From NCBI RefSeq assembly GCF_902713615.1, contig NW_024056013.1:1-64000 (forward strand): a DNA stretch of 64,000 nt, given 5' to 3'. Source of the DNA: Scyliorhinus canicula (lineage: Eukaryota). The notes under the pieces were generated by a model. It saw only the letters and a program-made list of their open reading frames with translations. It ran no database searches and was not told the origin of the DNA. Position 1 is the first letter of the stretch. The number at the start of each line of letters is the position of its first letter. A program made the translations under genes and the position numbers. Of the stretch, positions 126 through 62,503 are shown one piece after another.

Positions 126-1210
126 CTGGGGTAGAGAATTCCAAAGCTTCACCACATCCTCGAGTAAAGAAATCCCTCCTCATCTCAGCTTTCTCTCCAT
201 TTTCCTGCCAGTTTCCCATAACCCTCGTCGCCCTCAATTAGAAATCTGTCTGTGGGGTGGATGGGTGGGGGGTCGATTTTTTACCTCAGTCATCAGGTAT
301 GTTCAAGACAAATATTGATAGGTTTCTAGATATTGAAGATATCGAGGGATATGGGGATTGTGTGGGAAAATGGTGTTGAGAAAGATCAACCAAGGATCTC
401 GTTGAATAGTTGAACAGACTCAGTGGGCCGAATGGCATACTCTTGCTCCTATTCTAATCTCCGTCTCCTGGTCAGGAAGCAGTGAGCTGAGCTTGGATCT
501 GTCAATCAACATGAATCAGCACCTTCAGGAGAATTGGGAGGGTGAATATTAGATACAGCAGAGTGAGAATGGAGGGAGAGTGTGTGGGATGGAGATTTAC
601 AGCTTTTGGAGAACAAGACGAAATTATGTTCCATAAGAACTAGAATTGTCCTGAATTTTAATAATAATGATCTTGATTGTCACAGGTAGGCTTACATTGC
701 AATGATGTTCCTGTTAATTTCTATTCTGTACTAACTGATGACTTTTGTGAATTTAAAGGATGTTGGAAGAGGAGGAATTATAGACAGAAATCTCAAACAT
801 CTCGTCTCGATGTGACAAACTCTCTCGATTAATTCTGAACTGAATATCATTGGGTTCTGAATATCATCGGCAAGAAGGAGAAATGTTTTTCCAATCTGTC
901 GGCTTCAAAAGATTTAAATGTGAATGTGACTGGAAAAGCACCGAGACCCACACAACACACACCCGAGTGAGAGTGTTCCAGTGAACTGACTGTGGAAACA
1001 TCAGTGTGACTGGAAAAGCACCGAGACCCACACAACACACACCCGAGTGAGAGAGTTCCAGTGAACTGACTGTGAAAAGAGCTTCAACTGTTACACAGCC
1101 TGAAAAAATATCACGTCTTTCACAGTGAGGAGAGACAGTGCACATGTTCTGTGTGTAGACAAAGCTTCCACTGATTGTCCAATCTGGAGAGACACGAGGA
1201 GACCCAAAAC

Positions 1211-2095
1211 ATGGAGAAACCATGGAAATGTGGGGACTGTGGGAAGGGATTCAGAGTCCCATCTGTGCTGGAGATTCATCGCCGCAGTCACACTGGAGAG
1301 AGACCGTTCATCTGCTCTCAGTGTGAGAAGGGATTCATTGATTTATCCACCCTGCGGAAACACCAGCGCGTTCACACTGGGGAGAGGCCGTTCACCTGTT
1401 CCAAGTGTGGGAAGGAATTCACTCAAGCATCCAACCTGCAGAAACACCAGCGAGTTCACACTGGGGAGAGGCCATTCACCTGCTCTCAGTGCGGGAAGGG
1501 ATTTATTGATTCATCTACCCTGTGGAAACATCAGCAAATTCACACTGGGGAGAAGACATTCACCTGCTCTGAATGTGGGAAGGGATTCACTCAGTTATCC
1601 ACCCTGCAGACACACCAGCGAATTCACACTGGGGAGAAGCCATTCACCTGCTCTCAGTGTGGGAAGGGATTCACTCAGTTATCCACCCTGCAGTCACACC
1701 AGCGAGTTCACACTGGGGAGAAGCCATTCACCTGCTCTCAGTGTGGGAAGGGATTTATTGATTCATCCACCCTACGGAAACATAGGCGAATTCACACTGG
1801 GGAGAAGCCATTCACCTGCTCCGTCTGTGGGAATGAATTCACACAGTTATCCAGTCTGCAGTCACACCAGCGAGTTCACACTGGGGAGAAGCCATTCACC
1901 TGCTCTCAGTGTGGGAAGAGATTTGTTGATTCATCCACCCTGCGGAAACATCAGCGAATTCACACTGGTGAGAAGCCATTCACCTGCTCTCAATGTGGGA
2001 AGGGATTCACTCAGTTATCCACCCTGCAGTCACACCAGCGAATTCACACTGGGGAGAAACCATTCACCTGCTCTGTGTGGGAAGGGATTTATTGA
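1211..2095 (+). CDS. C2H2 zinc-finger protein, 10 intact fingers, then frameshifted
   Basis: ATG at 1211 ([10 protein letters not shown]); CxxC-x12-HxxxH repeats with TGE(K/R)P linkers; 2-bp loss near 2075 (tgctctgtgtgggaag) ends the frame at 2095. Confidence 0.85.
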
Positions 2096-2342
2096 TTCAT
2101 CCACCCTGCGGAAACATCAGCGAATTCACACTGGGGAGAAGCCATTCACCTGCTCGCCGTGTGGGAAGGGATTCACTCCAGCATCCAACCTGCGGAAACA
2201 TCAGCGAGTTCACACTGAGGAGAGACCATTCACCTGCTCTCAGTGTGGGAAGGAATTCCCTCAGTTATCCAGTCTGCAGAGACATCAGCGAGTTCACACT
2301 GGGGAGAGACCATTCACCTGCTCACAGTGTGGGCAGGGATTA
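2075..2342 (+). pseudogene. Out-of-frame continuation of the ZNF array (about 3.5 fingers), cut by a CR1 insertion
   Basis: ORF 1125..2354 ends [18 protein letters not shown]...FTCSQCGQG and runs into a LINE tail. Confidence 0.85.
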
Positions 2343-4480
2343 CATAGAAAATAGGAGCAGGAACAGATCATTTGGCCTTTTGCGCCTGCTCTGCCATTCA
2401 TTATGGTCATGGCTTATCATTCAACTCAATAGCCAAATCCCGCTTTCCCCTCCATATCCTTTGATCCCCTTCGCCCAAAGTGCTATATCTAAATGTTTCT
2501 TGAAAACATACAATATATTGGCCTCAACTATTTCCTGTGGTAACAAATTCCACAGACTCACCACTCTCTGGATGAAGAAATCTCTCCTCATCTCTGTCCT
2601 AAACTGGGGCAGCACGGTGGCACAGTGGGTTAGCCCTGCTGCCTCACGGCGCCGAGGTCCCAGGTTTGATCCCGGCTCTGGGTCATTGTCCATGTAGAGT
2701 TTGCATATTCTCCCCATGTCTGTGTAGGTTTTGTCCCCACAATCCAAAGATGTGCAGGTTAGGTGGATTGGCCATGCTAAATTGCCCCTTAATTGGAAAA
2801 AATTAATTGGGTACTTTAAATTTTTTTTAAAATATATGTCCTAAATGGTCTCCCCCGTATCCTCAGATGGTGACATCTGGTTCTGTACACGCCCACCATC
2901 GTGAAAATCTTTCCTGCATCTACCCTGTCAAGTCCTGTTAGAATATTATAGGTTTCAATGAGATTTCTCCCCCCCCCCCCCCCCCCCCCTTCATTCTTGT
3001 CAATGCCAGCAAATACAAACCTAACTGATTCAGTCTCTCATGCAACTGTCCCACCATGCTAGGAATCAGCTTGGAAAACCTGCGCTGTGATCCCTCTTGC
3101 GCAAGAACATCCTTCCTCAGATTCGGAGACCAAAACTGCACACAATATTCTCGGCAAGCCCCTGTATAATTGCAGCAAGATATCCCCGCTTCTGTACTCT
3201 AATCCGCTCGCAATGAAGGCTAGCATATCATTTGCTTTCTTTACCGCCTGCTGTAGCTGCATGTTTACCTTTAGCGACTGCTGTATGAGGATACCCAGAT
3301 CTCGTTGCACATTCCCTTCTAATTCATGACCAATCAGATAATAGTCTGCCTTCTTGCTTATGCTCCCAAAAGTGGATAACCTTGCATTTCTCATAATTAT
3401 ACTGCATCTGCCATTCATTTGCCCACTCACTCAACTTGTCCAAATCACTCTGAAGGATCTCTGCATCCTACTCACAGCCCCCCTCCGCCTCCCGGCCTAA
3501 GCAACTTGGTGTCATCTGCAAATTTGGAGATATTGCATTTTGTTCCCTCATCTAAATTGTTAATATATAGGGTGACACAGTGGTTTGCACTGCTCCCTCA
3601 CGGAGCTGAAGACGAGGGTTCAATCCTGGCCCTGGATCACTGTCCATGTGGAGAGAAGTTCCCCCCTGTTTGTGTGGGTCTCACTCCTATAAACCAATGA
3701 TGTGCAGGGTACGTGAATAGTTTTTGAACCAATTTTCTGACCATCTCAATACACTACCCCTAATCCCATGTGCTTTAATTTTACACGCTAATCTCTTGTG
3801 CGGGACTTTGTCAAAAGCCATCTGAGAGTCCAAATATACCACATCCACTGGCTCCCCCTCATCAACTCTACCAATTACACCCTTGAAGAATTCAGTAGAT
3901 CTGTCAAGCATGATTTCCTCTTCACAAATCCATGCTGACTCTGTCCGATCCTGCCACTGGTTTCTAAGTGCTTTGCTTTAAAATCTTTGATAATGGATTC
4001 TAAAATTTTCTCCACTGCCGATGTCAGGCTTACTGGTCTATAATTCCCTGTTTTCTCTCTGTATCCTTTTTAAATAGTTGAATTTCATAAACCACCCTCC
4101 AGTCTGCAGGAATTGTTCCAGGGTCTATGGAATCCTGGAAGATGACCACCAATGCATCCACTATTTCGAGAGCCTGAAGTACTTTGGTCGCAGATTATCA
4201 GGCCCTGGGGATTTATCAGCCTTCAATCCCATCAATTTCCCCAACACCATTTCTTTACTAATATTGATCTTCAGTTCCTCCCTCTCACTAAATCCTGCGT
4301 TCCCCAACATTTCTGGTATCTGATTTGTGGCTTCATTTGTGAAGACAGAACCAAAGTATGTATTTATTTGCTCAGCCATTTCTTTGTTCCCTATTATACA
4401 TTCCCCTGTTTCCGATTGTAAGGAACCTACATTTGTCTTCACCAATCTTTTTCTCTTCACATACTGACAGAAACTTTTAC
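2341..4480 (-). mobile_element. CR1/HER1-type LINE, 5'-truncated and decayed, with nested SINEs
   Basis: Minus-strand ORF2 peptides VDVVYLDSQMAFDKVPHKRL, KSPGPDNLRP, VQRDLGIL, FFIQRVVSLWNLLP; 3' tail at about 2341. Confidence 0.9.
2605..2830 (+). mobile_element. V-domain SINE (short variant) nested in CR1
   Basis: ggggcagcacggtggcacagtgg head, ccaggtttgatccc B-box, ttaggtggattggccatgctaaattgccc. Confidence 0.85.
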
Positions 4481-10215: not shown

Positions 10216-10454
10216 TGGGACTGGAAGATCCAGCCAGCAGGACGGACTGGAAAACCCCACGCATTGAAACAATCCGATCAGTTGATTCTGCTGATCCTCT
10301 TCCACTATTGCCTCGAAAGTCCTTTCTCGTCCAAATTCTGAACTCACATCTTTCTCCTCTTTTCCTGCTATCTCCCATCATGCTCTCTGAGCTCATCTTG
10401 TCTCTGATACTTACCCTTTGCTCCTTTGGCTCGATTCTCATTCAACTGTTGAGC

Positions 10455-10960
10455 ATCCAATTTCCACAATCTCTACATTTCCATGGTACCTCCATGGAGT
10501 CAGTGTCCTTGTGCATTTCCTCTTTAGACAATCAAGTGAAGCTTGGTCCTCACACAGAACACGTGTATGGTTTCTCCCCTTAGTGAATGGTGTGTTTTTT
10601 CAGGCTGTAACTAGTGAAAGCTGTTTCCACAGTCCGTCCACTGGAACACACTCACTCGGGTGCTTGTGTATCTCGGTGTTTTTCCAGTCACACATATGTT
10701 TGAAATATTTTCCCACAAACAGAACAAACATTTTTCATTCCACATTCATAGTCGAAGGATATTCAGGTCCTGATCAATTGAGTGACACAGTCAGATCTTA
10801 ATGTGATATTTCGAGTTTACAAAGGCCACACCATCAGTCCAGGTCAGAAATTCAGAACAGACAATTCCAGTTTCTGGGGAACATTTTTTTCTCTCTTCTT
10901 TCCCCAAAGCTGTAAATCTCCATCCCACACACTCTCCCTCCTCCCTGGGCTGAAATCCAA
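10455..10960 (-). pseudogene. Truncated ZNF gene relic (leader plus first half-finger)
   Basis: Minus strand reads MEVPWKCRDCGN from ATG at 10495, preceded by the family leader and intron sequence. Confidence 0.75.
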
Positions 10961-12810: not shown

Positions 12811-13976
12811 GCAGGAAACTGGGAGTGGAGGAAATAAATGGTGCAGATGGTGAGATGGGTTTGGATTTCAGCCCAGGGAGGAGGGGTGTGTGGGACGGGG
12901 ATTTACAGCTTTGGGGGAACAATAGAGAAAAAAATATGTTCCAGAGAAACTAGAATTGCCTGTTCAGAATTTCTATCCTGGACTGACAGTGATAGCTTTT
13001 GTAAACTCCTTTTACAGGGGGTTAGAATTGGAGAATTTGCACACAACAAACAACCCAACAGAAAGGTTTGTCTCTTTGTGAATTCCATCCTGCATTGACA
13101 GTGATGACTTGTGTAAAATGAGAGATTACAGCTCTCAGGAAAGATTAAATGGAGTGGGGCCTTTTTCTATCGACAACAACAAATTAAGCATTGACCTGCT
13201 ATAAATCTTTTAAATTATCAGTAGTTTGGAGAGGGGCAATGTGAGAGAGTGACCATCAATAAACAACCAGTCATCAATGCAAGAAAGTTACGAATAAAAT
13301 CCAAGTGAATAATACAGACAAAATTATTTATCACGGGTTCAGAATGTGCAACTCATTACCATGGAAAGGAGTTGAGGAAAGTGCTGAGATGTTTTCAAAA
13401 GGAAACGGGACAAGCACATGAGAGAAAATGGAATCGAAAATCAGCTGAAAGGCTGAGATTTGATAGGTGTGACAGTTGGAGATGTATGCCGAGTATTGAC
13501 AGCAGCAGAATCTGTGACAGAATGGCCTGGTTGTATCTTGTATATTCACAGTAATTCAATGTAATCTCCTTTTACAGAATATTTGCAGTTGCAAACATCA
13601 TGTTGAGATCTGACACAGTCACTTGATTCATCAGGACCGGCCTTTCAACGTGGAAGGAGAAATGTTTGTCTGTCTTTGGGAAAGCACCGAGACACAGACA
13701 TCTAAGTAATTTTCCACAGTTAGCTGGAACTGTGCTTTAACCAATCACACAGCATGCAATTAAATTGCAGCATTTACATCAGGGAGACATCTTACTCAGG
13801 CTTCAACTGATGATCCAAGTTGGAGAGACATAAGGACATTCGCACCAAAGGAATCAAGAAGCAGCAATAGGACATTCAGCCCCGTGAGCCTGTTCCACCA
13901 TTTAATAACATCACGGCTGATCTGATAGTGACCTCAAATCTGCATCCCACCTATACCTGATAACCCGTCGATAACC

Positions 13977-15335
13977 ATGGAGAAACCGTGGAAATGTGGG
14001 GACTGTGGGATGGGATGCCATTCCCCGTCTGAATTGGAAACTCATCAACGTATTCACACTGGGGAAACACCGTTCGCCTGCTCTGTGTGCGGGAAGGGAT
14101 TCACTCGGTCATCAACCCTCCTGACACACCAACTTGTTCATACTGATCAGAGACCGTTTAAGTGTGCTGACTGTGGAAAGAGCTTTAAATGCAGAAAGGA
14201 TTTATTGACACATCAACGTATTCACACTGGGGAGAGGCCATTCATCTGCTTAGTGTGTGGGAAGGGATTCACTCTGTCATCCCACCGCCTGTCACACCAA
14301 CTTGTTCATACTGATCAGAGACCTTTTAATTGTGCTGACTGTGAGAAGAGCTTTAAAAGCAGAAATAGTTTACTGTTACATCAACGCACTCACACTGGGG
14401 AGAGGCCGTTCACCTGTTTGGAATGTGGGAAGGGATTTAATGCTTCGTCAAAACTCCGGGCTCACCGTCAGGTTCACTCTGACCAGAGGCCGTTTAAATG
14501 TGCTGACTGTGAAAAGAGCTTTAAAAGCAGAAAGAATTTACTGACACATCAACGCACTCACACTGGGGAGAAGCCATTCACCTGCTCCGTGTGTGGGAAG
14601 GGATTCACTCAGCCATCATTGCTCCTGAGACACCAACTTGTTCATACTGATCAGAGACCGTTTAAATGTTCTGACTGTGAGAACAGTTTTAAAAGTGAAA
14701 AGGATTTACTGAGACACCAACGCACTCACACTGGGGAGAGGCCATTCACCTGCTCCGTGTGTGGGAAGGGATTCACTCGGTCATCCCACCTCCTGGAACA
14801 CCAACTTGTTCATACTGATCAGCGACCTTTTAAATGTGCTGACTGTGAGAAGAATTTTAAAAGTAAACCGGATTTACTGAGACATCAACGCACTCACACT
14901 GGGGAGAGGCCATTCACCTGCTCCGTGTGTGGGAAGGGATTCACTCAGTCATCAGTCCTCCTGAGACACCAACTTGTCCATACTGATCAGAGACCTTTTA
15001 AATGTGCTGACTGTGAAAAGAGCTTTAAAAGCAGAAAGGAGTTACTGACACATCAACGTACTCACACTGGAGAGAGGCCGTTCACCTGCTCCGTGTGTGA
15101 GAAGGGATTCACTCGGTCATCCCACCTTCAGCAACACCAGCGAGTTCACACTGGGCAGAGACCGTACTCTTGCCCCGTGTGTGACAAGAAATTTACTCAG
15201 TCATCCAACCTGATGACGCACCAACTTGTTCACACTGATCAGAAACCTTTTAAATGTTCTGACTGTGAAAAAAGATTTAAAAGTGAACAGCATCTGCAGA
15301 AACACCAGCGAGTTCACACTGATACAGAATCATAG
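13977..15335 (+). CDS. C2H2 zinc-finger protein, 16 fingers, alternating two-finger unit
   Basis: Intact 452-aa ORF, accATGg context; TDQRP and TGERP linkers alternate. Confidence 0.92.
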   Translation: MEKPWKCGDCGMGCHSPSELETHQRIHTGETPFACSVCGKGFTRSSTLLTHQLVHTDQRPFKCADCGKSFKCRKDLLTHQRIHTGERPFICLVCGKGFTLSSHRLSHQLVHTDQRPFNCADCEKSFKSRNSLLLHQRTHTGERPFTCLECGKGFNASSKLRAHRQVHSDQRPFKCADCEKSFKSRKNLLTHQRTHTGEKPFTCSVCGKGFTQPSLLLRHQLVHTDQRPFKCSDCENSFKSEKDLLRHQRTHTGERPFTCSVCGKGFTRSSHLLEHQLVHTDQRPFKCADCEKNFKSKPDLLRHQRTHTGERPFTCSVCGKGFTQSSVLLRHQLVHTDQRPFKCADCEKSFKSRKELLTHQRTHTGERPFTCSVCEKGFTRSSHLQQHQRVHTGQRPYSCPVCDKKFTQSSNLMTHQLVHTDQKPFKCSDCEKRFKSEQHLQKHQRVHTDTES

Positions 15336-27148: not shown

Positions 27149-27583
27149 CTATGATTCTGTTTCAGTGTGAACTCGCTGGTGTTTCAGCAGATTCTGTTTA
27201 CTGTTAAAGATCTTCTCACAGTCAGCACAATTAAAACTCCTCTGATCAGTATGAACAAGTTGGTGTCTCAGGAGGATTGATAATTGAGTGAATCCCTTCC
27301 CACACACGGAGCAGATGAAGGGCCTCTCCCCTGTGTGAGTGCGTTGGTGTACCAGTAAATTCTTGTTACTTTTAAAACTCTTCTCACAGTCAGCACATTT
27401 AAAAGGTCTCTGATCAGTATGAACAAGTTGGTGGCTAAGGAGGTGTGATGACCGAGTGAATCCCTTCCCACACACGGAGCAGGTAAATGGCCTTTCCCCA
27501 GTGTGAATACGTCGACGAGTTTCCAATTCAGATGGGTAACTGAATCCCATCCCACAGTCCCCACATTTCCACGGTTTCTCCAT
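27149..27583 (-). CDS. C2H2 zinc-finger protein, 5 fingers (first lacks a His); short inverted paralog of 13977
   Basis: 144-aa [16 protein letters not shown]...HTETES; upstream 27584-28340 mirrors 13340-13976. Confidence 0.7.
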
Positions 27584-27964
27584 GGTTATTGACAGATTAT
27601 CAGGTGTAGGTGGGATGCAGATTTGAGGTCACGATCAGCCGTGATGTTATTAAATGGTGGAACAGGCTCAGGGGCTGAATGTCCTGTTGCTGCTTCCTGA
27701 TTCCTTTGGTGCGAATATCCTTATGTCTCTCCAACTTGGATCATCAGTTGAAGCCTGAGTACGGTGTCTCCCTGATGTCAATGCTGCAATTTAATTTCAT
27801 GCTGTGTGATTGGTTAAAGCTCAGTTCCAACTAATTGTGGACAATTACTTAGATGTCTGTGTCTCGGTGCTTTTCCAATCACAGTGATTTTTGAAATTTT
27901 TTCTGAAAGACAAAACAGACAAACATTTCTCTTTCCACGTTGAAAGGCCGGTCCTGATGAATCA

Positions 27965-28694: not shown

Positions 28695-29729
28695 ATGGAC
28701 TATTCTCCAAATTCTGTTGCATTCTTGGACACACTCATCTCCATCAAGGATGGTCACCTTAGCACTTTGCTTTACCGCAAGCCCACAGAGAATCTCACGA
28801 TGCTCCACTTCTCCAGCTTTCACCCAAAACACATTAAAGAAGCCATCCCCTATGGACAAGCCCTCCGTATACACAGGATCTGCTCAGATGAGGAGGAGCG
28901 TAACAGACACCTACAGATGCTGAAAGATGCTCTCGTACGAACGGGATATGGCGCTCGACTCATCGATCGACAGTTCCAACGCGCCACAGCAAAAAACCGC
29001 ACCGACCTCCTCAGAAGACAAACACGGGACACCACTGACAGAGTACCCTTCGTCGTCCAGTACTTTCCTGGGGCGGAGAAACTACGACATCTTCTTCGCA
29101 GCCTTCAACACATCATCAATGAAGATGAACATCTTGCCAAGGTCATCCCCACACCCGCACTACTGGCCTTCAAACAACCGCGCAACCTCAAACAAACCAT
29201 TGTTTGCAGCAAATTACCCAGCCTTCAGAACAGCGACCACGACACCACACAACCCTGCCAGGGCAATCTCTGCAAGACATGCCAGATCATCGACTTGGAT
29301 ACCACCATTACACGTGGTAACACCACCCACCAGGTACACGGTACATACTCGTGCGACTCGACCAATGTAGTCTACCTCTTACGCTGCAGGAAAGGACATT
29401 GGCAGGACATGCAGACACTACAACAACAAATGAATGGGCATCATGCGACAATCACCAGGCCGGAATGTTCCCTTCCAGTCGGGGAACACTTCAGCAGTCA
29501 AGGGCATTCAGCCTCTGATCTCCGGGTAAGCGTTCTCCAAGGCGGTCTTCAGGACACGCGACAACGCAGAATTGCCGAGCAAAAACTTATAGCTAAGTTC
29601 TGCACGCATGAGTGCGGCCTCAACCGGGATCTTGGATTCATGTCGCATTACATCCACCCCCCACCATCTGGCCTGGACTTGCAAAATCCCACCAACTGTT
29701 CTGTCTTGAGACAATTCACACCTCTTTAA
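28695..29729 (+). pseudogene. PLE ORF remnant: RT thumb and GIY-YIG endonuclease
   Basis: 344 aa; CKTC linker, NVVYLLRC with the YIG segment deleted, EHF, E..LIAKF..GLNRD. Confidence 0.85.
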
Positions 29730-29850
29730 CCTGTGATTATCCCTCTCCCTGGATCTAATGATTTGATTACCTGCAAATGCTCGGATTCCAAGCATTGTCC
29801 AGCATCTCTGACTTTGTCTATATAAATGTTTCTGGAACGTACCTCACCAT

Positions 29851-29887
29851 TCACCTGAGGAAGGAGCTGCGCTCCGAAAGCTCGTGT
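29851..29887 (+). ncRNA. Minimal type I hammerhead ribozyme motif in the PLE pLTR
   Basis: CAC-CUGAGGA-A-GGAGC(UGC)GCUCC-GAAA-GCUC-GUG: intact core, 5-bp stem II, palindromic AGCU stem III, CUC cleavage triplet. Confidence 0.75.
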
Positions 29888-29946
29888 TTGAAACAAACCT
29901 GTTGGACTTTAACCTGGTGTTGTGAGACTTCTTACAATGATTGTGA

Positions 29947-30660
29947 CGGGTTTGCTCCAGCTCACAAATGCCCAGGGACTGATTGACGGCGGATTCGGAC
30001 CAATAGGAAAAGGGGGCGGGGCTTGAAGACCGAACGAGATCAGCTGGTCCTCCAGCCAATCAGAGTGAATGGGAGGCGGAGCAAAGCCGTGGTTCTCGGT
30101 CGGTCCGCATGCGCCCGGCCACCCGGGCCTGTCTTGAGAAAAGCCCGAGCAGCTTTCGCTGGTCCAACTGCCGTGTCCGAGCTTCGTATTCGGGGCCAAC
30201 ATGGAGTGTTTATGAAGCCTCCCGACCCATCCGCCGGTTCCATCCCTCCCTCATGACTCACCGGGCGCGATGTGACCGAGTTAGGATTCCCACCCGACTG
30301 CCTGAATCCTCAGTTGCCATCGGTACTGCGCATGCTGCAGCATCACGTGGGAGACCGGGCTCAGCCCCGCCCCTCATTCACTCCGATTGGTTGGACGACC
30401 CTCTGCAACCACTCGGTCCTCCTGCCCCCTCTCTTCCTATTGGTCCAGAGCTGCCGTCAATCACTCCCTGGGCATGGTGAGCTGGAGCATGTGCAGTACC
30501 GACGCTGGACTCGGCCGGGAGGTTTCACTGAAACCCGGTGGAGGTTCCAAACCCCAATAAGAAGTTTCCGGGCCCGGGTTTGCATCAAGCGGGGAACCAG
30601 CTGCGGCCTGCACACACTCACGATCCACGAACCGATGAAACCGCACCAACACCGCCCGCG
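29947..30660. promoter_or_regulatory. CpG-island promoter, inverted paralog of 12120-12810
   Basis: 30290-30490 is the reverse complement of 12230-12440; CCAAT, GC-box and GCGCATG motifs. Confidence 0.75.
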
Positions 30661-30683
30661 GCGGCTCGTTCGGCTTGGGCCTC

Positions 30684-31466
30684 CTAGCCAGAATTCTGTG
30701 GGCTCCCTCTAACTCCAGGGGACCCAGCTCCCATCAGCGAGTTTAACATAGTCACCACATAGGCCGCTAGGTCCGACCCCTCCAGCCCCTCCGTGAGGCC
30801 CAGGATCCACAAATTCTTCCTCCTCGACCAGTGGTCCAGCTCCTCAAACTGCTCCTGCCATCTTTTATGGAGCGCCTCGTGCATCTCCACCTTCCCCGTC
30901 ACGGCCACGACCTCATCCTCCCTTTCGGCTGAAGAAGGAGCCGTGCTCCGAAAGCTCGTGTTTGAAACAAACCTGTTGGACTTTAACCTGGTGTTGTAAG
31001 ACTTCTTACTGTGCTCACCCCAGTCCAACGCCGGCATCTCCACATCATCCCTTTCGGATGCCTGCTGCTGCAGCTCCCGGATCGCAGCCCCCTGGGCTGT
31101 CTGGGTCTCCATCAATTCCCTGTTGGTTACATTCAGCGACTCCAACAGCTCCAACTTAAGCTCCTGGAAGCAGCGCAGCAGAGTCGCCTGCTGCTCCTGA
31201 GCCCATTGCCTAAGCTCCTCAAGGCCTCCGCTGGCTGCCATTTTGTCTTCCTTCCCCCGCTTTTTCAGGGGTGCTTTCTCCGGTTTTCTCCTTACCCCAC
31301 TCCTGGTCCGGACCATAGGACCGTTGGGATCGACTCCTGACCTTTTCCCCCGTCGGGATTTGCCGCCACAGCTCCGTTGGGGGCCCTGAAAAGAGCCCCA
31401 AAGTCCGTTCTCAGCGGGAGCTGCCGAATGTGCGGCTTCGCTCCTCATTGCCGCCACCGGAAGTCC
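30684..31466 (-). mobile_element. L1-clade LINE 5' end (5'UTR plus ORF1 N-terminal half), 3'-truncated
   Basis: Starts ggacttccggtggcggc; coiled-coil region then SRRKNLWILGLTEGLEG (ORF1 RRM start). Confidence 0.8.
30929..31047 (+). mobile_element. Short PLE pLTR derivative with hammerhead core, 10-bp TSD
   Basis: ctgaagaaggagccgtgctccgaaagctcgtg...catctccacatca; TSD tccctttcgg at 30919-30928 and 31048-31057. Confidence 0.85.
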
Positions 31467-32466
31467 AATCCACCAGTGTTTGTAAATAGTTTACTCAATT
31501 GTTTTAGTTTGAACAAGACTTTTAATGATTAGGAAGGACAGGAATTTCAGATGGTAAATTGAAATAAATTTAGTTAAAATAAAGATACATATCAATACAG
31601 AATGAAAAGGGTAAACGTATCGATATGGAAGGAAAAAGTGTAAACTGATCGATACAGAAGGAAAAAGGGAAACTGATCGATACAAAACAGACTTTTTCCA
31701 GTTCTCTTGGCTGATCAGGCTGTATAAACATAATCCCTCTTGTACCACTTCTTTGGCAACAATAATTTTTTAAAATATAAATTTAGAGTGCCCATTTCAT
31801 TTTTTCCAATTAAGGGGCAATTTAGCGTGGCCAATCCACCTACCCTGCACCTCTTTGGGTGGTGGGGGCGAAACCCACACAAACACTGGGACAAGGTGCA
31901 AACTCCACACGGGCAGTGACCCAGAGCTGGGATCGAACCTAGGACCTCAGCGCTGTGAGGCAGCAATGTTAACCAATGCCCCACCTGCTGCCGTTTTGAC
32001 AACAATTCTGATGGGAATCTTGCTTTGGGGATTCCAGTACTTGGCTGACAATGGACCTTCTCCTCGGGTTTTAAATCCTTAAGTAGCTCCTCCCTCAGTT
32101 TGAATAAAATGATTAGAACTCAATGGTTGGTCAATTTCATTACCTAGACAGATATATGAACGGGCGGGGAACAGAGGGAAGTAGACCTTGGAAAATAGGG
32201 GACAGGTTTAGATAAAGGATCTGGATCGGCGCAGGCTGGGAGGGCCGAAGGGCCTGTTCCTGTGCTGTAATTTTCTTTGTTCTTGTTCTTACAGAAGCTA
32301 GAGTACTGAATTTAAAAGAGGCTGACATTACTTTCAGGTATAACCCAGTCTTTTAACACATACTACAAACTGATTATTAAATCTTCACAATTAAAATCAA
32401 TTGACGATCGCTATATGTTTCTGACTGGTGAGTAATGAATACACTTGATTAATACAATTGGTTAAT

Positions 32467-38545: not shown

Positions 38546-39304
38546 TCACAAGTGAACTCTCTGGTGTTTCAGACGAGCGGATGGCTGAGTGAATCCTCTG
38601 CCACACACGGGGCAGGTGAACGGCTTCTCCCCAGAATGGATTCGCTGGTGTTTCATCAAATCCCTTCTGCTTTTAAAGCTCTTCTCACAGTCAAAACATT
38701 GAAATGGTCTCTCATCAGTGTGAACAAGTGTATGTGTCCTAAGCTGCGATTTTGCAGCAAATCCCTTCCCACACTCAGCACAGGTAAAGGGTTTCTCTCC
38801 AGTGTGAATTCGCTGGTGATTCTGAAAATTCGGTAAATTAGTGAAACTCTTCCCACACTCCGTGCAGGTGAATGCTTTCTCTTCAGTGTGAACACGCTGG
38901 TGTCTAAGAAGATGCGATGATCTAATAAATCCCTTCCCACACACAGAGCAGACGAACGGCCTCTCACCAGTGTGGACACGCTTGTGTAGAGTGAGGTGGG
39001 AAGAACAAGTGAATCTCTGCCCGCACTCAGAGCAGTGGAATGGTCTCTCCCCAGTGTGAACCCGTAGATGTTCAGTGAGGTGGGATGAACACCGGAAGCT
39101 TTTCCCGCACTGAGAGCAATCGTACGGTTTCTCTCCAGTGTGAACTCGCTGGTGTGTCATTAGGCTGGATGACTGAGTGAATTCCTTTCCACAAGTGGAG
39201 CAGGTGAACAACTTCTCTCCAGTGTGCCTGCGTTTATGAGTTTCCAGTGCAGATGGGAAGCTGAAACCCTTCCCACAGACCCCACATTTCCACGGTTTCA
39301 CCAT
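38546..39304 (-). CDS. C2H2 zinc-finger protein, 9 diverse fingers
   Basis: Intact 252-aa ORF MVKPWKCGVC..., gccATGg context. Confidence 0.9.
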   Translation of the reverse strand: MVKPWKCGVCGKGFSFPSALETHKRRHTGEKLFTCSTCGKEFTQSSSLMTHQRVHTGEKPYDCSQCGKSFRCSSHLTEHLRVHTGERPFHCSECGQRFTCSSHLTLHKRVHTGERPFVCSVCGKGFIRSSHLLRHQRVHTEEKAFTCTECGKSFTNLPNFQNHQRIHTGEKPFTCAECGKGFAAKSQLRTHTLVHTDERPFQCFDCEKSFKSRRDLMKHQRIHSGEKPFTCPVCGRGFTQPSARLKHQRVHL

Positions 39305-40169
39305 GGCGTCACTAGATTGGATAATCAGTTAAAGCTTGTTGATACAGAGAATGATTGTACGGTGTCTCCCCACTGTGAATTATGTGATTTTTTTTCAGGC
39401 TGTGTAATAGTTGAAGCTCTTTCCACAGTCAGTTCACTGGAACTCTCACTCGGGTGTGTATTGTGTGGCTTTCAGTGCTTTTCCAGTCACACTGATGTTT
39501 CCAGTCAGTTCACTGGAACTCTCTCACTCGGGTGTGTGTTGTGTGGGTCTCGGTGCTTTTCCAGTCACACTGATGTTTCAGATCCTTTCCTGCTGATGTT
39601 CAACTCATGATGAATGTGTGAAAACCTCTTCTTCCAATGCCCTGTAAAAGGAGTTTACTGTGTCAGTACCACTGTCTGCCAGGATAGAAATTCAGAACAA
39701 ATAATTCTAATTTCTACGGAATATTCTTCCCTCTCTTATTTCCCCAAATATGTTGCCCAATTAAAGTAAAAGAAAGCAAAATCACAACAAAAACAAGGAA
39801 AACTTTTAAACTAAACCAAAATGTTGCTTTCAGTATCTCAGAAGCACTCTGCACCCTGAGGTAACAAACAATTGTGGAAGGTATCAAGTTTACCGGTGGA
39901 CACCTCATCTTCCCGTTCCAGGGTCACCTAAACATGGACAAGACGATGGAAGAGGGTCCAGCAGCCAGAGGAAGCCCTACGTTCTCTCCCATAGGGCTCA
40001 CCAATCTGGATCAACAAATTGGTGCTTTGAGCAGACCCTTCGCTCCGACTAGCCCAGTCCCCTCTGTGCAGCAAAGCTAGGAATGTGGAGTTAACGTTTC
40101 ACATTAATTTACAAGCAGCCCCTTCCGGTAACTATCCAGGGGCTGTAACCTCCCGAACAGAATCCCCAC

Positions 40170-43064: not shown

Positions 43065-44423
43065 TTTGGGAGAATCTGTTTTTGTGTTCTGTGTGTGGAC
43101 CAAGCTTCAGCTGATCATCAAATAGGCAGCATAGTAGCACAATGATTAGCACTGTTGCTTCACAGAGCCAGGGTCCCAGGTTTGATTCCCGGTTTAGGTC
43201 ACTGTCTGTGCAGAGTCTGCACGTTCTCCACATGTCTGCGTGGGTTTCAACCAGCTGCTCTGCTTTACTCCCTCAAGAGCTGTTGGGTTATTTGGACATT
43301 CTGAATTCTCTCTGTGTGTACCCGAACAGGCATCAGAGTGTGGTGACTAGGGGCTATTCACAGTAACCTCATTGCAGTGTCAATGTAAGCCTACTTGTGA
43401 CAATAAAGATTATTAATTAAACGTGATCATGCAAATGTTGTCCCATCAGGGAGAAACCGTGAAAATGTGGAGGCTGTGGGAAGGGATTCAATTATCCATC
43501 TGAGCTGAATATTCATCAACGCAGTCACACCGGGAAGAGAGCATTCACCAGCTCTGCATGTGAGAAAGGGTTCACTAAATGGGGCCTCACGGTAGCATGG
43601 TGGTTAGCATCAATGCTTCACAGCTCCAGGGTCCCAGGTTCGATTCCCGGCTGGGTCACTGTCTGTGTGGAGTCTGCACGTCCTCCCCGTGTGTGCGTGG
43701 GTTTCCTCCGGGTGCTCCGGTTTCCTCCCACAGTCCAAAGATGTGCGGGTTAGGTGGATTGGCCATGCTAAATTGCCCGTAGTGTAAGGTTAATGGGGGG
43801 ATTGTTGGGATACGGGTTACGTGGGTTTAAGTGGGGTGATCATTGCTCGGCACAACATCGAGGGCCGAAGGGCCTGTTCTGTGCTGTACTGTTCTATGTT
43901 CTATAAATCATCCAACCTTCTGAGACACCATTGAGTTCACACTCGGGAGAGACTGTTCACCTGCTCTGTGTGTTGGAAAGGCTTCACAACCTCATCCCAC
44001 CTCCTGTCACACCACCATATTTACAATGAAGAGAGACCTTTCCAATGTTCCGACTGTGAGAAAAACTATAAAAGGAAAAGTGATCTGTTGAGCCATAAAC
44101 TCACAAACACTGGGGAGAAGCTGTTCATCTGCTCTGTTTCTGGGAAAGGATTCGCCCGTTCATTCGACCTGCTGACCTACCAACTTGTTCATACTAATAA
44201 GAGGCCGTTTAAATATCCTGACTGTGAGAAGAGCTTTAAAAGCCGGAAGGATCTGCTGACACATGAACACACTCACACCAGGGAGTCACCTTTGAGCTGC
44301 TCTTTCTGTGGGAAAGGTTTTACTTGGAAGTCCAATCTACTTAAGCACCAGTGGATTCACACTGGGGAGAGGCCGTTCATCTGCTCAGTGTGTGGGAGGG
44401 CATTCATTCACTCTCCCACATGA
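43065..44423 (+). pseudogene. ZNF pseudogene with stops, lost Cys/His residues and SINE insertions
   Basis: gagaaaccgTGAaaatgt (W>stop), no ATG, SINEs at 43124-43415 and 43581-43903, degenerate fingers in ORF 43968..44423. Confidence 0.85.
43581..43903 (+). mobile_element. Young V-domain SINE inside a ZNF finger
   Basis: Consensus-like V-domain; flanked by ctaaat / ctataaat (short TSD taaat). Confidence 0.9.
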
Positions 44424-48560: not shown

Positions 48561-48651
48561 TTTATACATGAAAGATGACTTCATTCTCACTCCACCATAT
48601 AAATATTTCCCACTTTCTCCCTCTTTTAGCTTTCATGTGGAGATGCTGGCG

Positions 48652-48688: not shown

Positions 48689-49945
48689 TTTGAAACAAAC
48701 CTGTTGGACTTTAACCTGGTGTTGTAAGACTTCTTACTGTTTTAGCTTTGACAAAGGGTCATCTGGACTCCAAGCGTTAACTCTTTTCTCTCCCTACAGG
48801 TGCTGCCAGACCTGCTGAGATTTTCCAGCATTTTCTCTTTGATTTGCTGTGACCTCCTGGACAGGAAGCTGTGAGCATGGATCTGTCAATCAGCCTGAAT
48901 CAGCACCTTCAGGAGAATAGGGAGGGTGAATAGCGCCGTAGTGTGGTGACTTGGGTTTTTCACAGTAACTTCATTGCAGCGTTAATGTAAGCCTACTTGT
49001 GACACTAATAAAGATTATTATTATTATTAGATACAGCAGATTCACCTGAGGAAGGAGCAGTGCTCGTGTTTGAAACAAACCTGTTGGACTTTAAACTGGT
49101 GTTGTAAGACTTCTTACAGCAGATAAAGAATTGACGGCGAGAGGCTGCACGGTGGCACAGTGGTTAGCACTGCAACCTCACTCCGCCGAGGTCCCAGGTT
49201 CGATCCTGGCTCTCGGTCACTGTTCATGTGGAGTTTGCACATTCTCCCCGTGTCTGCTTGCGTTTCGCCCCGACAACCCAAAGATGTGCAGGGTAGGTGG
49301 ATTGGCCACGCTAAGTTGCCCCTTAATTGGAAAAAAATGAATTGGGTACTTTAAATTTATTTTAAAAAGAGAATGGAGGGAGTGTGTGGGATGAAGATTT
49401 GCAGCTTTCGGGGAATAAGAGGAAGAAATATGACATAGAAACTAGAATTGTCTGTTCTGACTTTCTATCCTGTTTTGACAGTGATGAATTTTGTAAAATG
49501 TTTTTACAGGATATTAGATGAGGAGGAATTACAGACAGAAATCTCAAACGTTACATCTCGATCTGATGGTCACTCGATTCCCTGGAACCTGAATTTCCTT
49601 AAACTATGAATGTAGAATGCAAAATGTTTGCCCGAACTGTCAGCTAAAGATTTCAAACATCTGTGTGACTGGAAAAGCACCGAGACCCACACAACACACA
49701 CCCAAGTGAGAGTTTCAGTGAACTGACTGTAGAAACATCAGTGTGACTGGAAAAGCACCGAGACCCACACAACACACACCCGAGTGAGAGTTTCAGTGAA
49801 CTGACTGTAGAAATAGCTTTAACCAGTTACACAGTCTGAAAAACATAACACCATTCAGAGCGGGACGAGATCGCACCCGTGTTGTGTCTTTGGATGAGGC
49901 TTCAACTGATTGACCAGCCTGGAGAGACACAAAGAGACCCAAAAC

Positions 49946-50764
49946 ATGGAGAATCCGTGGAAATGTGGGGATTGTGGGAAGGGATATAGATTCCCATCTC
50001 AGCTGGAGGTTCATCGACACAGTCACACTGGGGAGAGGCCATTCACCTGCTCTGTATGTGGGAAAGGATTTACTCGATTATCCAATCTGCAGACACACCG
50101 GCGAGTTCACACTGGAGAGAGGCCGTTCATTTGCTCTCAGTGTGGGAAAGGATTTTGTAATTTGTCCCACCTATTGAGACACCAGCGAATTCACACGGGG
50201 GAGAGGCCCTTTACCTGCTCCCAATGTGGAAAAGGATTCCGGGATTCATCCCACCTATTGAGCCACCAGGAAGGTCACACTGAGGAGAGGTCATTCACCT
50301 GCTCTCAGTGTGGGAAAGGATTTACTCAATTATCTCACCTGCGGATCCACCAGCGAGTTCACACTGAGGAGAGGCCATTCACCTGCTCTCAGTGTGGGAA
50401 AGGATTCACTCAGTTATCCAACCTGCAGGCACATCAGCGAGTTCACACTGGGGAGAAGCCATTCACCTGCTCTCAGTGTGGGAAACGATTTACTCAAGTA
50501 TCCACCCTGCGGAGACACCAGCGAGTTCACACTGGGGAGAGGCCGTTCACCTGCTCTCGTTGTGGGAAAGGATTTACTCAGTTATCCCACCTGCGGAGAC
50601 ACCAGCGAGTTCACACTGGGGAGAGGCCGTTCACCTGCTCTCGTTGTGGGAAAGGATTTACTCAGTTATCCCACCTGCGGAGACACCAGCGAGTTCACAC
50701 TGGGGAGAAGCCGTCCACTTCTCAATGTGAGACGGGATTACCTGTTTCATCGGACCTGCTGTGA
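49946..50764 (+). CDS. C2H2 zinc-finger protein, 9 fingers plus degenerate terminal finger
   Basis: ATG 49946 [10 protein letters not shown]; acceptor-like tttttacag at about 49509. Confidence 0.9.
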
Positions 50765-57825: not shown

Positions 57826-58758
57826 CTATAATCGCTTGTGAACTCGCTGATGTGTCTGCAGGTTGGCTGACTGTGTGAATCCCTTCCTACAAACAGAACA
57901 GATGAATGGTCTCTCCCCGGTGTGAACTCTCTGATGTGTCAGCAGGCTAGATGACTGAGTGAATCCCTTCCCACGTTGAGAGCAGAGGAATGGCCTCTCC
58001 CCAGTGTGAACGCGCTGGTGTTTCAACAGGGTGGATGAATCTCTGAATCCCTTTCCACATGCAGGGCAGGTGAATGGTCTCTCCCCGGTGTGAATTCGCT
58101 GGTGAGAGAGCAGGGTGGAGGACTGAGTGAATCCCTTCCCACAGTCAGAACAAGTGAACGGCCTTTCCCCATTGTGAACTCGCTGGTGTATCAGCAGCTT
58201 GGATAACTGAATGAATCCCTTCCCACATGCAGAGCAGGTGAACGGCCTCTCTCCAGTGTGAACCGCCTCGTGTGTCAGTAAGTGGGTTAACTGAGTGAAT
58301 CCCTTCTCACACTGAGAGCAGGTGAATGGCCTCTCCCCCGTGTGAACCCGCTGGTGTTTCTGTAGATTGGATGAATTAGTAAATCCTTTGTCACACTGGG
58401 AGCAGGTGAAAGGCTTCTCCCCAGTGTGAACTCTCTGGTGTGACTGCAAATGGGATAACAGAGTGAACGCCTTCCCACATTCAGAGCAGGTGAATGGCCT
58501 CTCACCAGTGTGAACCCGCTGGTGTGACTGAAGGTTGGACGATCGACTGAACCCCTTCCCACAATCACAGCAGGTGTATGGCCTCACCCCGGTGTGAACT
58601 CGTTGGTGCATCAACAGGTTGGATGAATCACTGAACCCCTTCCCACAGTCAGAGCAGGTGAACGGCCTCTCTCCAGTGTGACCGCGTCGATGGATTTCCA
58701 CCTCAGATGGAGCTTTGAATCCCTTCCCACAGTCCCCACATTTCCACGGTTTCTCCAT
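57826..58758 (-). CDS. C2H2 zinc-finger protein, 11 fingers (10th has C>R)
   Basis: ATG at 58758 [10 protein letters not shown]; intact ORF; family leader 58759-59120. Confidence 0.9.
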
Positions 58759-59261
58759 AGTTAAAGTCAACTTGTAACTCTCCAGGTTCGATGATCAGTT
58801 GAAGCCTCGTCCACACACAAAACACGGGTACGGTCTTTACCCGCTGTAAATGGTATGATGTTTCTTCAGGCTGTGTAACTGGTTAAAACTCTTTCCACAG
58901 TCAGGAACAATCTCACTCGGGTGTGTGTTGTGGGTCTTGCTGCTTTTCCAGTCACACTGATGTTTGAAACCTTTAGAAGCTGACAGTTCGGACAAACATT
59001 TCTTCTAGATTCAAAGGCCGATGATATTCAGGTTCCAGGGAACTGAGTGACTGTCAGATCGAGACGTGACATTTGAGACTTCTGTCTGTAATTCTTCCTC
59101 ATCTAATATCCTGTAAAAACAATTTAGAAAATTCCTCGCTGTCAGTACAGAATAGAAACTCAGAACAGATCATTCTAGTTTGTATGGAACAATTTTTCCT
59201 CTCTCTTATTTTCCGAAAGCTGCAAATCTCCATCCCACACACTCCCTCCATTCTCACTCTG

Positions 59262-61526: not shown

Positions 61527-61726
61527 ACTCTTTATTTTAAGGATGGCACAATAGCACAGTGGTTAGCACTGTTGCTTCTCAGTGCCATTCCCTTTTTTTT
61601 TGTTTTAAATCAATTTAACAGTGTTACAAGGGGAAGATTTGCAGTCAGGAAACTCAAACCAAACATTACATCAGAATCTGAGGATCGCCCAATTTGTTGC
61701 AACCTGAATATCAGTGAATTTTGAAC

Positions 61727-62503
61727 ATGGAAGGAAAAAGCACCGTTCATAGTGAGGAGAAACCATGGGAATGTGAGGAGGGATTCAGATCCACATCGCA
61801 ACTGGAAATTCATCATCCCAGACACTCTGGGGAGAGACCATTCACTTGCTCCGATTGTGGGAAGGGATTCTCTCGATCATCCAGCCTGCTGCAACACCAG
61901 CGAGTGCACACCGGGGAGAAACCATTCAACTGCTCCGTGTGTGGGAAGGGATTCGCTCAGTCGTCCAGCCTGCTGAGACACCAGCGAGTTCACACTGGGA
62001 AGAGACCATTCATCTGCTCAGAGTGTGGGAAAGGATTCATTCGGTCATCTGACTTAATGACGCACCAGCGGGTTCACACGGACGAGAGACCATTTAAATG
62101 TCCAGACTGCGGGAAGTGCTATAAAGGTTCTCGGGCTCTGATACTCCATCAACGTGTTCACACTGATGAGAGACCTTTTCAATGTCCAGACTGTGGGAAA
62201 TGCTTTAAAAGTTCCGGGGAACTTATGCGGCATCAACGTATTCACACTGACGAGAAACCGTTCAGGTGCTCTTACTGTGGGACTGGGTTCAAGACATCAT
62301 CTGACCTCACTGTACACCAGCGAACTCACACTGGGGAGAGACCGTTCACCTGCTCCCAGTGTGGGAAGACATTCACTCAGTCATCCAGCCTGCTGACACA
62401 CAAGCGGGTTCACACTGCGGAGAGGCCTTACATCTGCCCCAAGTGTGGGATGGGATTCACACAGTCATCCAACCTGATGAGACACCAGCGAATTCACAAG
62501 TAA
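61727..62503 (+). CDS. C2H2 zinc-finger protein, 8 intact fingers, MEGKS-type start
   Basis: aacATGg at 61727; intact ORF; first finger has lost CxxC. Confidence 0.88.

What the first reader, a model, noticed from the sequence alone, without database searches (positions are those of the whole stretch)
850..1213. Family-wide fossil zinc-finger 5' leader with an invariant TGA: an effector-less ZNF class
Seen: the ~350 nt upstream of the ATG translate as decayed fingers (composite reading [55 protein letters not shown]). The second stop sits at helix position -1 and is TGA in all eight loci that retain the leader: 1172, 10532(-), 13808, 27744(-), 39325(-), 43112, 49907, 58795(-). In four loci it lies exactly 36 nt, in frame, before the ATG. 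The ATG occupies the Gly of a TGEKP linker (TMEKP). Neighbouring codons drift and frameshift, and a CR1 tail inserted just before the ATG at 13848-13973 left the 16-finger ORF intact. Inference: the family descends from a gene that lost its N-terminus and was restarted in a linker. It would encode finger-only proteins with no KRAB-, SCAN- or FiNZ-type effector. The retained stop may be under selection (uORF termination and reinitiation) or may be simple inheritance.
Basis: partly seen in the sequence, partly recalled or inferred. Interest (0 to 1): 0.75.

Follow-up and report, generated by a model that had tools for sequence, protein, structure and literature searches.

The report
Dead zinc fingers as gene leader
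The stretch in front of these shark zinc-finger genes is the decayed remnant of their own former spacer and first three fingers, and its shared TGA stop is an old inherited mutation scar rather than a selected signal, so the finding is real but fairly ordinary.

Summary
All eight TGA coordinates are right. Four loci (A, B, G, H) have exactly 36 nt, in frame, between the TGA and the ATG. The ATG sits at the Gly position of a TGEKP-type linker.

The leader is old. It has the same architecture in Mustelus, Scyliorhinus, Heterodontus and Heptranchias: a 3' splice site, a former spacer, three decayed fingers, then the start.

The TGA looks inherited, not selected:
- Basking-shark paralogues with that finger intact carry CGA there, so the stop is one CpG transition.
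- It is invariant in 13 of 13 aligned copies, but so are 4.9% of leader trinucleotides.
- Out-of-frame TGAs are equally well kept.
- One Scyliorhinus copy has TGG.
- The TGA ends an AUG-initiated uORF in only 2 of 16 copies.
- In a sister pair the leader diverges as fast as the 3' flank.

"Effector-less" is supported only indirectly. The ORFs match C2H2 families alone, and spacer-bearing proteins share no N-terminal domain. A conserved 3' splice site implies upstream, probably non-coding, exons. The start is ACG in four Heterodontus and Heptranchias copies.

No RNA data could be used. The scan noted the same leader on three other pieces of this genome.

The parts
716..758 (+). Locus A: end of the intron-like block (pyrimidine tract and AG) just 5' of the finger exon
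   Evidence: Aligns to the conserved branch-point/PPT/YAG|G block of other copies. In A the site reads TTTAAAG|G.
759..1210 (+). Locus A: non-coding leader part of the finger exon. It comprises a former spacer and three decayed fingers (F-3, F-2, F-1).
   Evidence: Three-frame translation and alignment. It has stops in all frames and 6 upstream ATGs.
883..885 (+). Conserved upstream ATG at the start of decayed finger F-3
   Evidence: Invariant in 12 of 12 copies that keep the site. uORF length ranges from 7 to 45 codons, and in Het3 the uORF has no stop within the stretch read.
925..1084 (+). 80-nt tandem duplication inside the leader (two units, 97% identical); also present in E and G
   Evidence: blastn self-hits 925-998 and 1005-1078; alignment.
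982..984 (+). TGA at the first Cys of decayed finger F-2 (repeated at 1062-1064).
   Evidence: TGA only in A, E and G; TGG in B; TGC or TAC in other species.
1172..1174 (+). TGA at helix position -1 of decayed finger F-1, 36 nt in frame before the ATG
   Evidence: Homologous codon is CGA, CAA or TGA in Cetorhinus copies.
1211..2095 (+). Locus A ORF (294 aa, 10 fingers) starting [11 protein letters not shown]. The array continues out of frame after 2095.
10442..10895 (-). Locus B: leader (TGA 10532-10534) and a dead ORF of 17 aa from ATG 10495
13592..15335 (+). Locus C: leader (TGA 13808-13810), repeat insertion 13848-13973, ORF 13977-15335 (452 aa, 16 fingers)
27149..27950 (-). Locus D: inverted duplicate of C (TGA 27744-27746, same insertion), ORF 27149-27583 (144 aa, 4 fingers)
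38546..39735 (-). Locus E: leader with a deletion between the TGA (39325-39327) and the ATG (39304); ORF of 252 aa, 9 fingers
43068..43122 (+). Locus F: fragment of decayed finger F-1 with the TGA (43112-43114), cut off by foreign sequence. A dead first finger follows at about 43444.
49418..50764 (+). Locus G: leader (TGA 49907-49909) and ORF 49946-50764 (272 aa, 9 fingers)
57826..59203 (-). Locus H: leader (TGA 58795-58797) and ORF 57826-58758 (310 aa, 10 fingers)
61573..62503 (+). Locus I: sister subfamily. It has a pyrimidine tract and AACAG|, a spacer with an in-frame stop, ATG 61727 (MEGKS) at the end of the spacer, and an ORF of 258 aa.
   Evidence: Same architecture as Cetorhinus copies.

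Best explanation
This is a cluster of an old, elasmobranch-wide family of finger-only C2H2 zinc-finger genes.

Ancestral gene (inferred). Upstream exon(s) were spliced to a large last exon that read spacer (..DLTESLDSSGPEYHRPLNVEGE) followed directly by fingers.

How the leader arose. In the lineage seen here the first three fingers died, and the spacer plus those fingers became about 360-450 nt of untranslated leader inside the finger exon. The family-wide TGA in the last dead finger is a single ancestral CGA(Arg)>TGA CpG transition, passed on by gene duplication and speciation.

Translation (inferred). It starts at an ATG in a good Kozak context (A at -3, G at +4), 13 codons after that stop, at the Gly position of the linker. 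That codon is itself one CpG transition away from the ACG seen in other sharks.

Product and current state. The protein is a bare finger array with no KRAB, SCAN, BTB or other recognisable effector. The leader now drifts neutrally through indels, an 80-nt duplication and a repeat insertion. The finger exon keeps its 3' splice site, so transcripts probably begin in upstream non-coding exon(s).

Shown: the anatomy, the cross-species depth, the CGA ancestry, and the absence of excess conservation. Inferred: use of the ATG, the non-coding nature of the upstream exons, and expression.
For: 1. Same leader in other sharks. It occurs in the same order at 75-90% identity in Mustelus asterias, Heterodontus francisci, Heptranchias perlo, Scyliorhinus torazame and an ENA contig. 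In Heptranchias the whole leader is still one frame, broken only by two TGAs.

2. Ancestral codon. Cetorhinus paralogues with finger F-1 intact have CGA (4 copies) or CAA (1) at the TGA position. One further Cetorhinus copy reads TGA there. Annotated proteins read GFSRSS or GFSQSS there.

3. Single origin. All 16 type-1 copies that keep a stop have TGA and none has CAA, the other product of CpG decay. This points to one ancestral event.

4. No excess conservation.
- 12 of 244 leader trinucleotides are invariant.
- The 8 TGA trinucleotides of the consensus, in any frame, average 0.885 intact against 0.679 for the rest.
- In the seven non-window copies 28.6% of trinucleotides are intact in all.
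- The S. torazame copy has TGG at both leader TGAs.

5. No coding signal. The leader shows no codon periodicity (0.877/0.859/0.859), whereas the CDS shows 0.870/0.844/0.809.

6. Neutral rate. In the ENA1/Mus1 sister pair the leader is 91.6% identical, against 93.6-94.9% for the 3' flank.

7. Start at the same codon elsewhere. RefSeq-type models start at MEKPW in Pristiophorus, Mustelus and Chiloscyllium. The Chiloscyllium copy has an unrelated upstream sequence yet the same ATG.

8. No effector found. The window ORFs match only C2H2 Pfam families. A spacer profile searched against 1.84 billion proteins gave 33 hits. The ten scanned against Pfam showed no non-finger (effector) domain, and the 11 N-terminal parts long enough to compare shared no similarity.

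9. Splice site. YAG|G with a pyrimidine tract is kept in about 20 of 24 copies in two subfamilies whose intron sequences differ. The S. torazame model XP_072362140.1 uses it.
Against: - No transcript, CAGE or ribosome data could be consulted. Use of the ATG, the transcription start site and splicing are all inferred.
- Four Heterodontus and Heptranchias copies have ACG in place of ATG. Three of them have open ORFs of 6-12 fingers and one is truncated (Het4). The ancestor may have lacked the ATG, which the simple 'restart' story does not explain.
- The two ancestral in-frame TGAs and the upstream ATG are all among the 4.9% of invariant trinucleotides. That is a mild hint of constraint.
- Paralogue homology stops abruptly about 100-160 nt 5' of the splice site and about 50-170 nt 3' of the stop codon. 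This fits constraint on the unit, or a fixed duplication or insertion boundary, better than plain neutral decay.
- Several window copies (A, B, D, F, G) are truncated or frameshifted, so part of the cluster is dead.
Confidence: 0.7

Rival explanations
1. The leader is a selected translational control module. The conserved upstream ATG and the TGAs define uORFs that throttle the main ORF or allow reinitiation on it, and the TGA 36 nt before the ATG is kept for that purpose.
For: - The upstream ATG (-243) and the TGAs at -198 and -39 are all invariant in the 14-copy alignment, and only 4.9% of trinucleotides are.
- The 36-nt spacing is kept in A, B, G, H and in six copies from other species.
- The S. 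torazame copy that lost the TGA has a new in-frame TAG 4 codons before the ATG.
- A Carcharodon RefSeq model is an ORF through the leader whose last residues are ..CGQGFN, the residues that precede the TGA codon in the other copies. Its DNA was not read.
Against: - The TGA at -39 ends an AUG-started uORF in only 2 of 16 copies.
- uORF length from the conserved ATG ranges from 7 to 45 codons, and in Het3 the uORF has no stop within the stretch read.
- Out-of-frame TGAs are as well kept.
- In independent copies 28.6% of trinucleotides are fully kept.
- The leader diverges as fast as the 3' flank in a sister pair.
- An 80-nt duplication, a 125-nt repeat insertion and deletions are tolerated.
Confidence: 0.1
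2. The real proteins are not finger-only. A coding upstream exon is spliced in frame to an acceptor between the TGA and the ATG/ACG, and the CTGAT around the stop serves as branch point. The fingers would then carry an N-terminal part, possibly an effector.
For: - The start position is ACG in four Heterodontus and Heptranchias copies. Three have long open ORFs and one is truncated; none has an early in-frame ATG (Het4).
- Annotated models in those species place acceptors in exactly this 36-nt stretch.
- CTGAT fits the yUnAy branch consensus (my own knowledge), and AG dinucleotides follow 15-24 nt later (sequence).
Against: - The three models use three different acceptors and three unrelated N-termini. 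One of those N-termini is a partial copy of the leader itself, and none has a Pfam domain or any similarity to another.
- The pyrimidine tract is weak.
- Models in Pristiophorus, Mustelus and Chiloscyllium start at the ATG.
- No upstream block within 6 kb is shared by the paralogues.
Confidence: 0.1
3. The TGAs are recoded, by selenocysteine insertion, programmed readthrough or A-to-I editing to UGG, so that the dead fingers are in fact translated.
For: - Both ancestral in-frame stops are TGA.
- In Heptranchias the leader is a single frame with no other defect.
- TGG replaces both TGAs in one Scyliorhinus copy.
Against: - Most copies carry frameshifts, an 80-nt duplication (not a multiple of 3) or insertions between the TGAs and the start.
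- There is no codon periodicity in the leader.
- The second His of finger F-1 is replaced by Arg or another residue.
- Rfam finds no SECIS or other family anywhere in the window at gathering score.
Confidence: 0.02

Closest known systems
Finger-only (effector-less) poly-C2H2 zinc-finger genes of vertebrates, including those that arose by loss of KRAB or SCAN exons (Tadepally et al. 2008, PMC2443715; Emerson and Thomas 2009, PMC2604467)
   Same: - Tandem arrays of C2H2 fingers with TGEKP-type linkers, encoded in one large last exon.
- Clustered, with tandem and inverted duplicates and frequent dead copies.
- No recognisable N-terminal domain.
- Origin by loss of a former N-terminal coding part.
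   Different: - This is an elasmobranch family for which I found no description in the papers searched.
- The lost N-terminal part is still present as a recognisable leader: a spacer plus three fingers.
- That leader is shared across shark orders, and the start codon lies inside a linker.
Degenerate or atypical fingers at the 5' end of KRAB-ZFP finger arrays in mammals
   Same: The first fingers of the array lose zinc ligands and decay while the downstream fingers stay intact.
   Different: In KZFPs the degenerate fingers stay in frame and are translated as part of the spacer (my own knowledge). Here they carry stops and frameshifts and lie 5' of the start codon.
FiNZ zinc-finger genes of cyprinid fish (Wells et al. 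2023, PMC10547256)
   Same: Lineage-specific, clustered, rapidly duplicating poly-ZNF families in a fish genome rich in transposons.
   Different: FiNZ proteins are defined by an N-terminal FiNZ domain. The ORFs here begin at the linker before the first finger and have no N-terminal domain at all.
uORF-bearing 5' leaders with reinitiation (GCN4/ATF4 type)
   Same: A long leader with several upstream AUGs and an in-frame stop shortly before the main AUG.
   Different: Number, length and frame of the uORFs are not conserved between copies, and the TGA rarely ends one.

Membership tests
Poly-C2H2 (Krueppel-type) zinc-finger genes | Tandem C-x2-C-x12-H-x3-H fingers joined by TGEKP-like linkers | tested here: met
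   4-16 fingers per ORF by regular expression. Pfam zf-C2H2 and zf-H2C2_2 match at E 1e-53 to 1e-114.
KRAB zinc-finger proteins | N-terminal KRAB domain (PF01352) | tested here: not met
   No KRAB hit in the four window ORFs scanned or in ten spacer-bearing shark proteins. Intergenic DNA was not scanned in six frames.
SCAN or BTB zinc-finger proteins | N-terminal SCAN (PF02023) or BTB (PF00651) domain | tested here: not met
   Absent from the same Pfam scans.
FiNZ zinc-finger proteins | N-terminal FiNZ domain before the fingers | tested here: not met
   The ORFs start 5 residues before the first Cys of finger 1 (MEKPWKC), so there is no room for a domain. No FiNZ profile was available, so upstream exons could not be screened for it.
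uORF/reinitiation leaders | uORF start, stop and spacing conserved among homologues | tested here: not met
   The upstream ATG is kept in 12 of 12 copies, but uORF length ranges from 7 to 45 codons. The TGA at -39 ends an AUG-uORF in 2 of 16 copies.
uORF/reinitiation leaders | Ribosome occupancy of the uORF and dependence of main-ORF output on it | not testable with these tools
Recoded UGA (selenoprotein or readthrough) | Open frame on both sides of the UGA in all homologues, and a SECIS or readthrough signal | tested here: not met
   Frameshifts, a duplication and insertions break the frame in most copies. There is no Rfam family in the window at gathering score.
Spliced multi-exon ZNF gene with the finger exon last | Branch point, pyrimidine tract and YAG|G at the 5' edge of the finger exon | tested here: met
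   Kept in about 20 of 24 copies in two subfamilies and used by the S. torazame model XP_072362140.1. Actual splicing in this genome was not tested.

The most novel reading that the evidence does not exclude
The leader is not inert. Two CpG transitions 39 nt apart (CGA>TGA and ACG>ATG) turned an internal finger-linker junction into a stop-plus-restart. Copies that still read ACG, in a strong ACC-ACG-G context, would then be translated by non-AUG initiation. The uORF-rich fossil leader would act as a family-wide brake that keeps these DNA-binding proteins at low dosage.
Probability: 0.08. Interest if true: 0.55.

Novelty: new member of a known kind. Interest (0 to 1): 0.3.

Why it matters
It documents how a large transcription-factor family can shed its N-terminal part and carry on as bare finger arrays. 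In sharks, whose genomes change slowly, the discarded coding sequence is still readable across orders that I take to have separated well over 200 million years ago (my own knowledge). This gives a clean case of start-codon relocation into a linker. It is also a caution for annotation: pipelines build spurious N-termini or leader ORFs at these loci.

It does not reveal a new mechanism. Finger-only ZNFs and loss of effector exons are well known, and the TGA behaves as an inherited scar.

Tried and rejected

2. Exact look-up of five window ORFs in the protein collection: none is on record.

3. Whole-protein homology search: swamped by generic ZNFs and uninformative. Searches restricted to residues 1-40 did find the shark relatives.

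4. Search for a shared upstream exon or promoter within 6 kb of each start, and with the S. torazame upstream exon as query. Only dispersed repeats were shared.

5. Spacer profile against 1.84 billion proteins, to find an ancestral N-terminal domain: none found.

6. ML tree of 16 leaders, to polarise ATG against ACG. The tree is star-like and the ancestral state is unresolved.

7. Rfam over the whole window: no family at gathering score.

8. Literature: no description of this shark family. The catshark genome paper does not mention zinc fingers.

9. I first read protein P0159 as a copy that had lost the TGA. Its 'M' is a TTG called by a prokaryote-style gene caller directly after the TGA, so I withdrew that reading.

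10. The 'CR1 tail' identity of the C/D insertion could not be checked because no repeat library was available. It is a dispersed repeat.

Full report
WHAT IS THERE

The window has no N runs. It holds nine loci of one C2H2 zinc-finger family in mixed orientation, separated by transposon debris.

Seven loci (A, B, C, D, E, G, H) have an ATG followed by GAG AAA CCN TGG AAA TGT, that is [11 protein letters not shown]. Their open arrays are:
- 4 to 16 fingers in A, C, D, E, G and H;
- a dead 17-codon ORF in B.

F is a fragment. I is a sister type.

Upstream of each ATG lies a homologous block. The 36-nt in-frame spacing holds in A, B, G and H. E has a deletion there. C and D share a 125-nt insertion that is a dispersed repeat found in five other shark loci.

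ANATOMY OF THE LEADER

I fetched related loci through annotated shark proteins:
- Mustelus asterias (L001);
- Heterodontus francisci (L002, L003);
- Heptranchias perlo (L004);
- Cetorhinus maximus (L005, L006);
- Chiloscyllium punctatum (L007);
- an ENA contig (L008);
- Scyliorhinus torazame (L009).

The block is shared from roughly 450-520 nt before the start down to the start, at 70-93% identity. From 5' to 3' it holds:

1. About 100-160 nt of intron-like sequence. It ends in a branch-point-like TACTGAC, a pyrimidine tract and YAG|G.
2. A spacer that is still an open frame in some copies (..DLTESLDSSGPEYHRPLNVEGE).
3. Decayed finger F-3. It begins at a conserved ATG and has a TGA at helix position +3.
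4. Decayed finger F-2.
5. Decayed finger F-1, with the TGA at helix position -1.
6. Twelve codons, then the start.

In Heptranchias the whole stretch from the spacer to the start is one frame, broken only by the two TGAs. Other copies add frameshifts. A, E and G carry an 80-nt tandem duplication.

It is TGC in Heptranchias and Mustelus, TAC in two Heterodontus copies and TGG in B.

ORIGIN OF THE TGA

Cetorhinus carries a sister subfamily in which F-3 and F-2 are absent and F-1 is intact. Four of its copies have CGA at the homologous codon, one has CAA and one has TGA. The annotated proteins read GFSRSS or GFSQSS there. The stop is therefore a CGA>TGA CpG transition.

All 16 type-1 copies that have a stop there have TGA, and none has CAA. 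A single ancestral event is far more likely than parallel decay. It predates the split of the lineages that hold Heptranchias and the galeomorph sharks.

IS THE TGA KEPT MORE THAN EXPECTED?

- In a 14-copy alignment the TGA is intact in 13 of 13 copies. So are 12 of 244 leader trinucleotides (4.9%). Among those 12 are the F-3 TGA, the upstream ATG and an out-of-frame TGA.
- All eight TGA trinucleotides of the consensus, whatever their frame, are above average: 0.885 intact against 0.679. This points to composition or mutation bias, not to a reading-frame function.
In them 28.6% of trinucleotides are intact in every copy.
- The S. torazame copy has TGG at both leader TGAs. An ENA-derived protein has Trp at the F-3 site.
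- The TGA at -39 closes an AUG-started uORF in only 2 of 16 copies. uORFs from the conserved ATG range from 7 to 45 codons.
- The leader shows no codon periodicity.
- In the one sister pair with alignable flanks (ENA1 and Mus1) the leader is 91.6% identical, against 93.6-94.9% for the 3' flank.

I conclude that the TGA is inherited, not maintained. The mild excess is that both ancestral TGAs and the upstream ATG fall in the invariant 5%. I record that as a residual hint.

THE START CODON

The ATG has A at -3 and G at +4 in every window copy, and reads ACCATGG in several species. Models in Pristiophorus, Mustelus and Chiloscyllium begin at it. Chiloscyllium has an unrelated, C-rich upstream sequence but the same ATG.

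Four Heterodontus and Heptranchias copies read ACG there. Three of them have open ORFs of 6-12 fingers, and one is truncated (Het4). Proteins from Pristiophorus and Heterodontus also read TTEK at that point.

ACG>ATG is a CpG transition. A tree of 16 leaders is star-like and does not polarise the change. How the ACG copies are expressed, if they are, remains open.

IS THE FAMILY EFFECTOR-LESS?

- The ORFs match only C2H2-type Pfam families.
- A profile of the spacer searched against 1.84 billion representative proteins found 33 proteins. The members whose source I looked up come from sharks or from ENA and JGI contigs. The 11 N-terminal parts long enough to compare are mutually unrelated, and the ten proteins scanned carry no non-finger Pfam domain.
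- Gene models in Heterodontus and Heptranchias reach the fingers through three different acceptors and three unrelated N-termini. That looks like model-building around the stop.
- No upstream block is shared by the paralogues within 6 kb.

On the other side, the 3' splice-site signature is kept in about 20 of 24 copies in both subfamilies, although their intron sequences differ. The S. torazame RefSeq model XP_072362140.1 joins an upstream exon to exactly this site.

The likeliest structure is therefore one or more non-coding upstream exons plus a finger exon whose first 360-450 nt are untranslated.

Locus I (ATG 61727, MEGKS) and the Cetorhinus copies start at a second internal ATG, at the end of the spacer. 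In many of them the spacer holds stops. The loss of the upstream reading frame has thus been met by two different internal starts.

WHAT STAYS UNEXPLAINED

Homology among paralogues ends abruptly about 100-160 nt 5' of the splice site. This is true even in the close ENA1/Mus1 pair. At the 3' end, homology among the older paralogues ends about 50-170 nt after the stop codon, whereas in that close pair the 3' flank stays alignable for more than 1 kb. A 129-nt repeat, 90% identical between species, abuts the 5' edge in several copies and in either orientation. Repeated insertion into an intron or promoter-proximal site would explain this, but I did not test it.

COMPARISON AND VERDICT

Finger-only poly-ZNF genes, and the loss of effector exons, are established (PMC2443715, PMC2604467). 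I found no paper that describes this shark family or its leader.

Three earlier notes of this scan describe the same leader on other pieces of this genome and reached the same reading. I treat them as leads only, but my own tests agree with them.

The finding is real and well observed. It extends across shark orders, with one of its two stops being private to this genome. It is best filed as a new member of a known kind.

Transcript evidence is the missing piece.

Noticed in passing
window 61573-62503 (+): Locus I belongs to a second subfamily, also seen in Cetorhinus. Fingers F-3 to F-1 are absent, the start is MEGKS at the end of the spacer, the spacer holds an in-frame TGA, and the first finger lacks its second Cys.
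   Followed up: partly
window 488-615, 10900-10941, 59204-59264; L001 286-414, 1771-1899, 9289-9417; L009 4837-4968: A repeat of about 129 nt, roughly 90% identical between Scyliorhinus, Mustelus and this genome, sits directly 5' of the leader block in several copies, in either orientation.
   Followed up: partly
window 1-64000: Rfam at gathering score finds no RNA family anywhere in the window. The hammerhead motifs noted at 29851-29887 and 48624-49124 therefore do not reach a curated threshold.
   Followed up: no
L009 7464-7816 (Scyliorhinus torazame): This copy has TGG at both leader TGAs but a new in-frame TAG four codons before the ATG. RefSeq annotates a 332-aa 'uncharacterized protein' that is an ORF through an upstream exon and the leader.
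   Followed up: partly
window 32535-33740 (+) and 28695-38000: A G+C-rich stretch with a reverse-transcriptase ORF (RVT_1, E 2e-31) and several long ORFs without Pfam matches. It is probably retrotransposon debris between ZNF loci D and E.
   Followed up: no
window 1211-2697 (+) and 49946-50942 (+): The arrays of loci A and G continue in another frame after their ORFs end (overlapping ORFs 1993-2697 and 50310-50942). These genes are therefore frameshifted late in the array.
   Followed up: no
L001 10001-11257 (Mustelus asterias): The annotated 418-aa protein runs from six fingers straight into a reverse-transcriptase-like tail, so a transposon insertion has been read as coding sequence.
   Followed up: no
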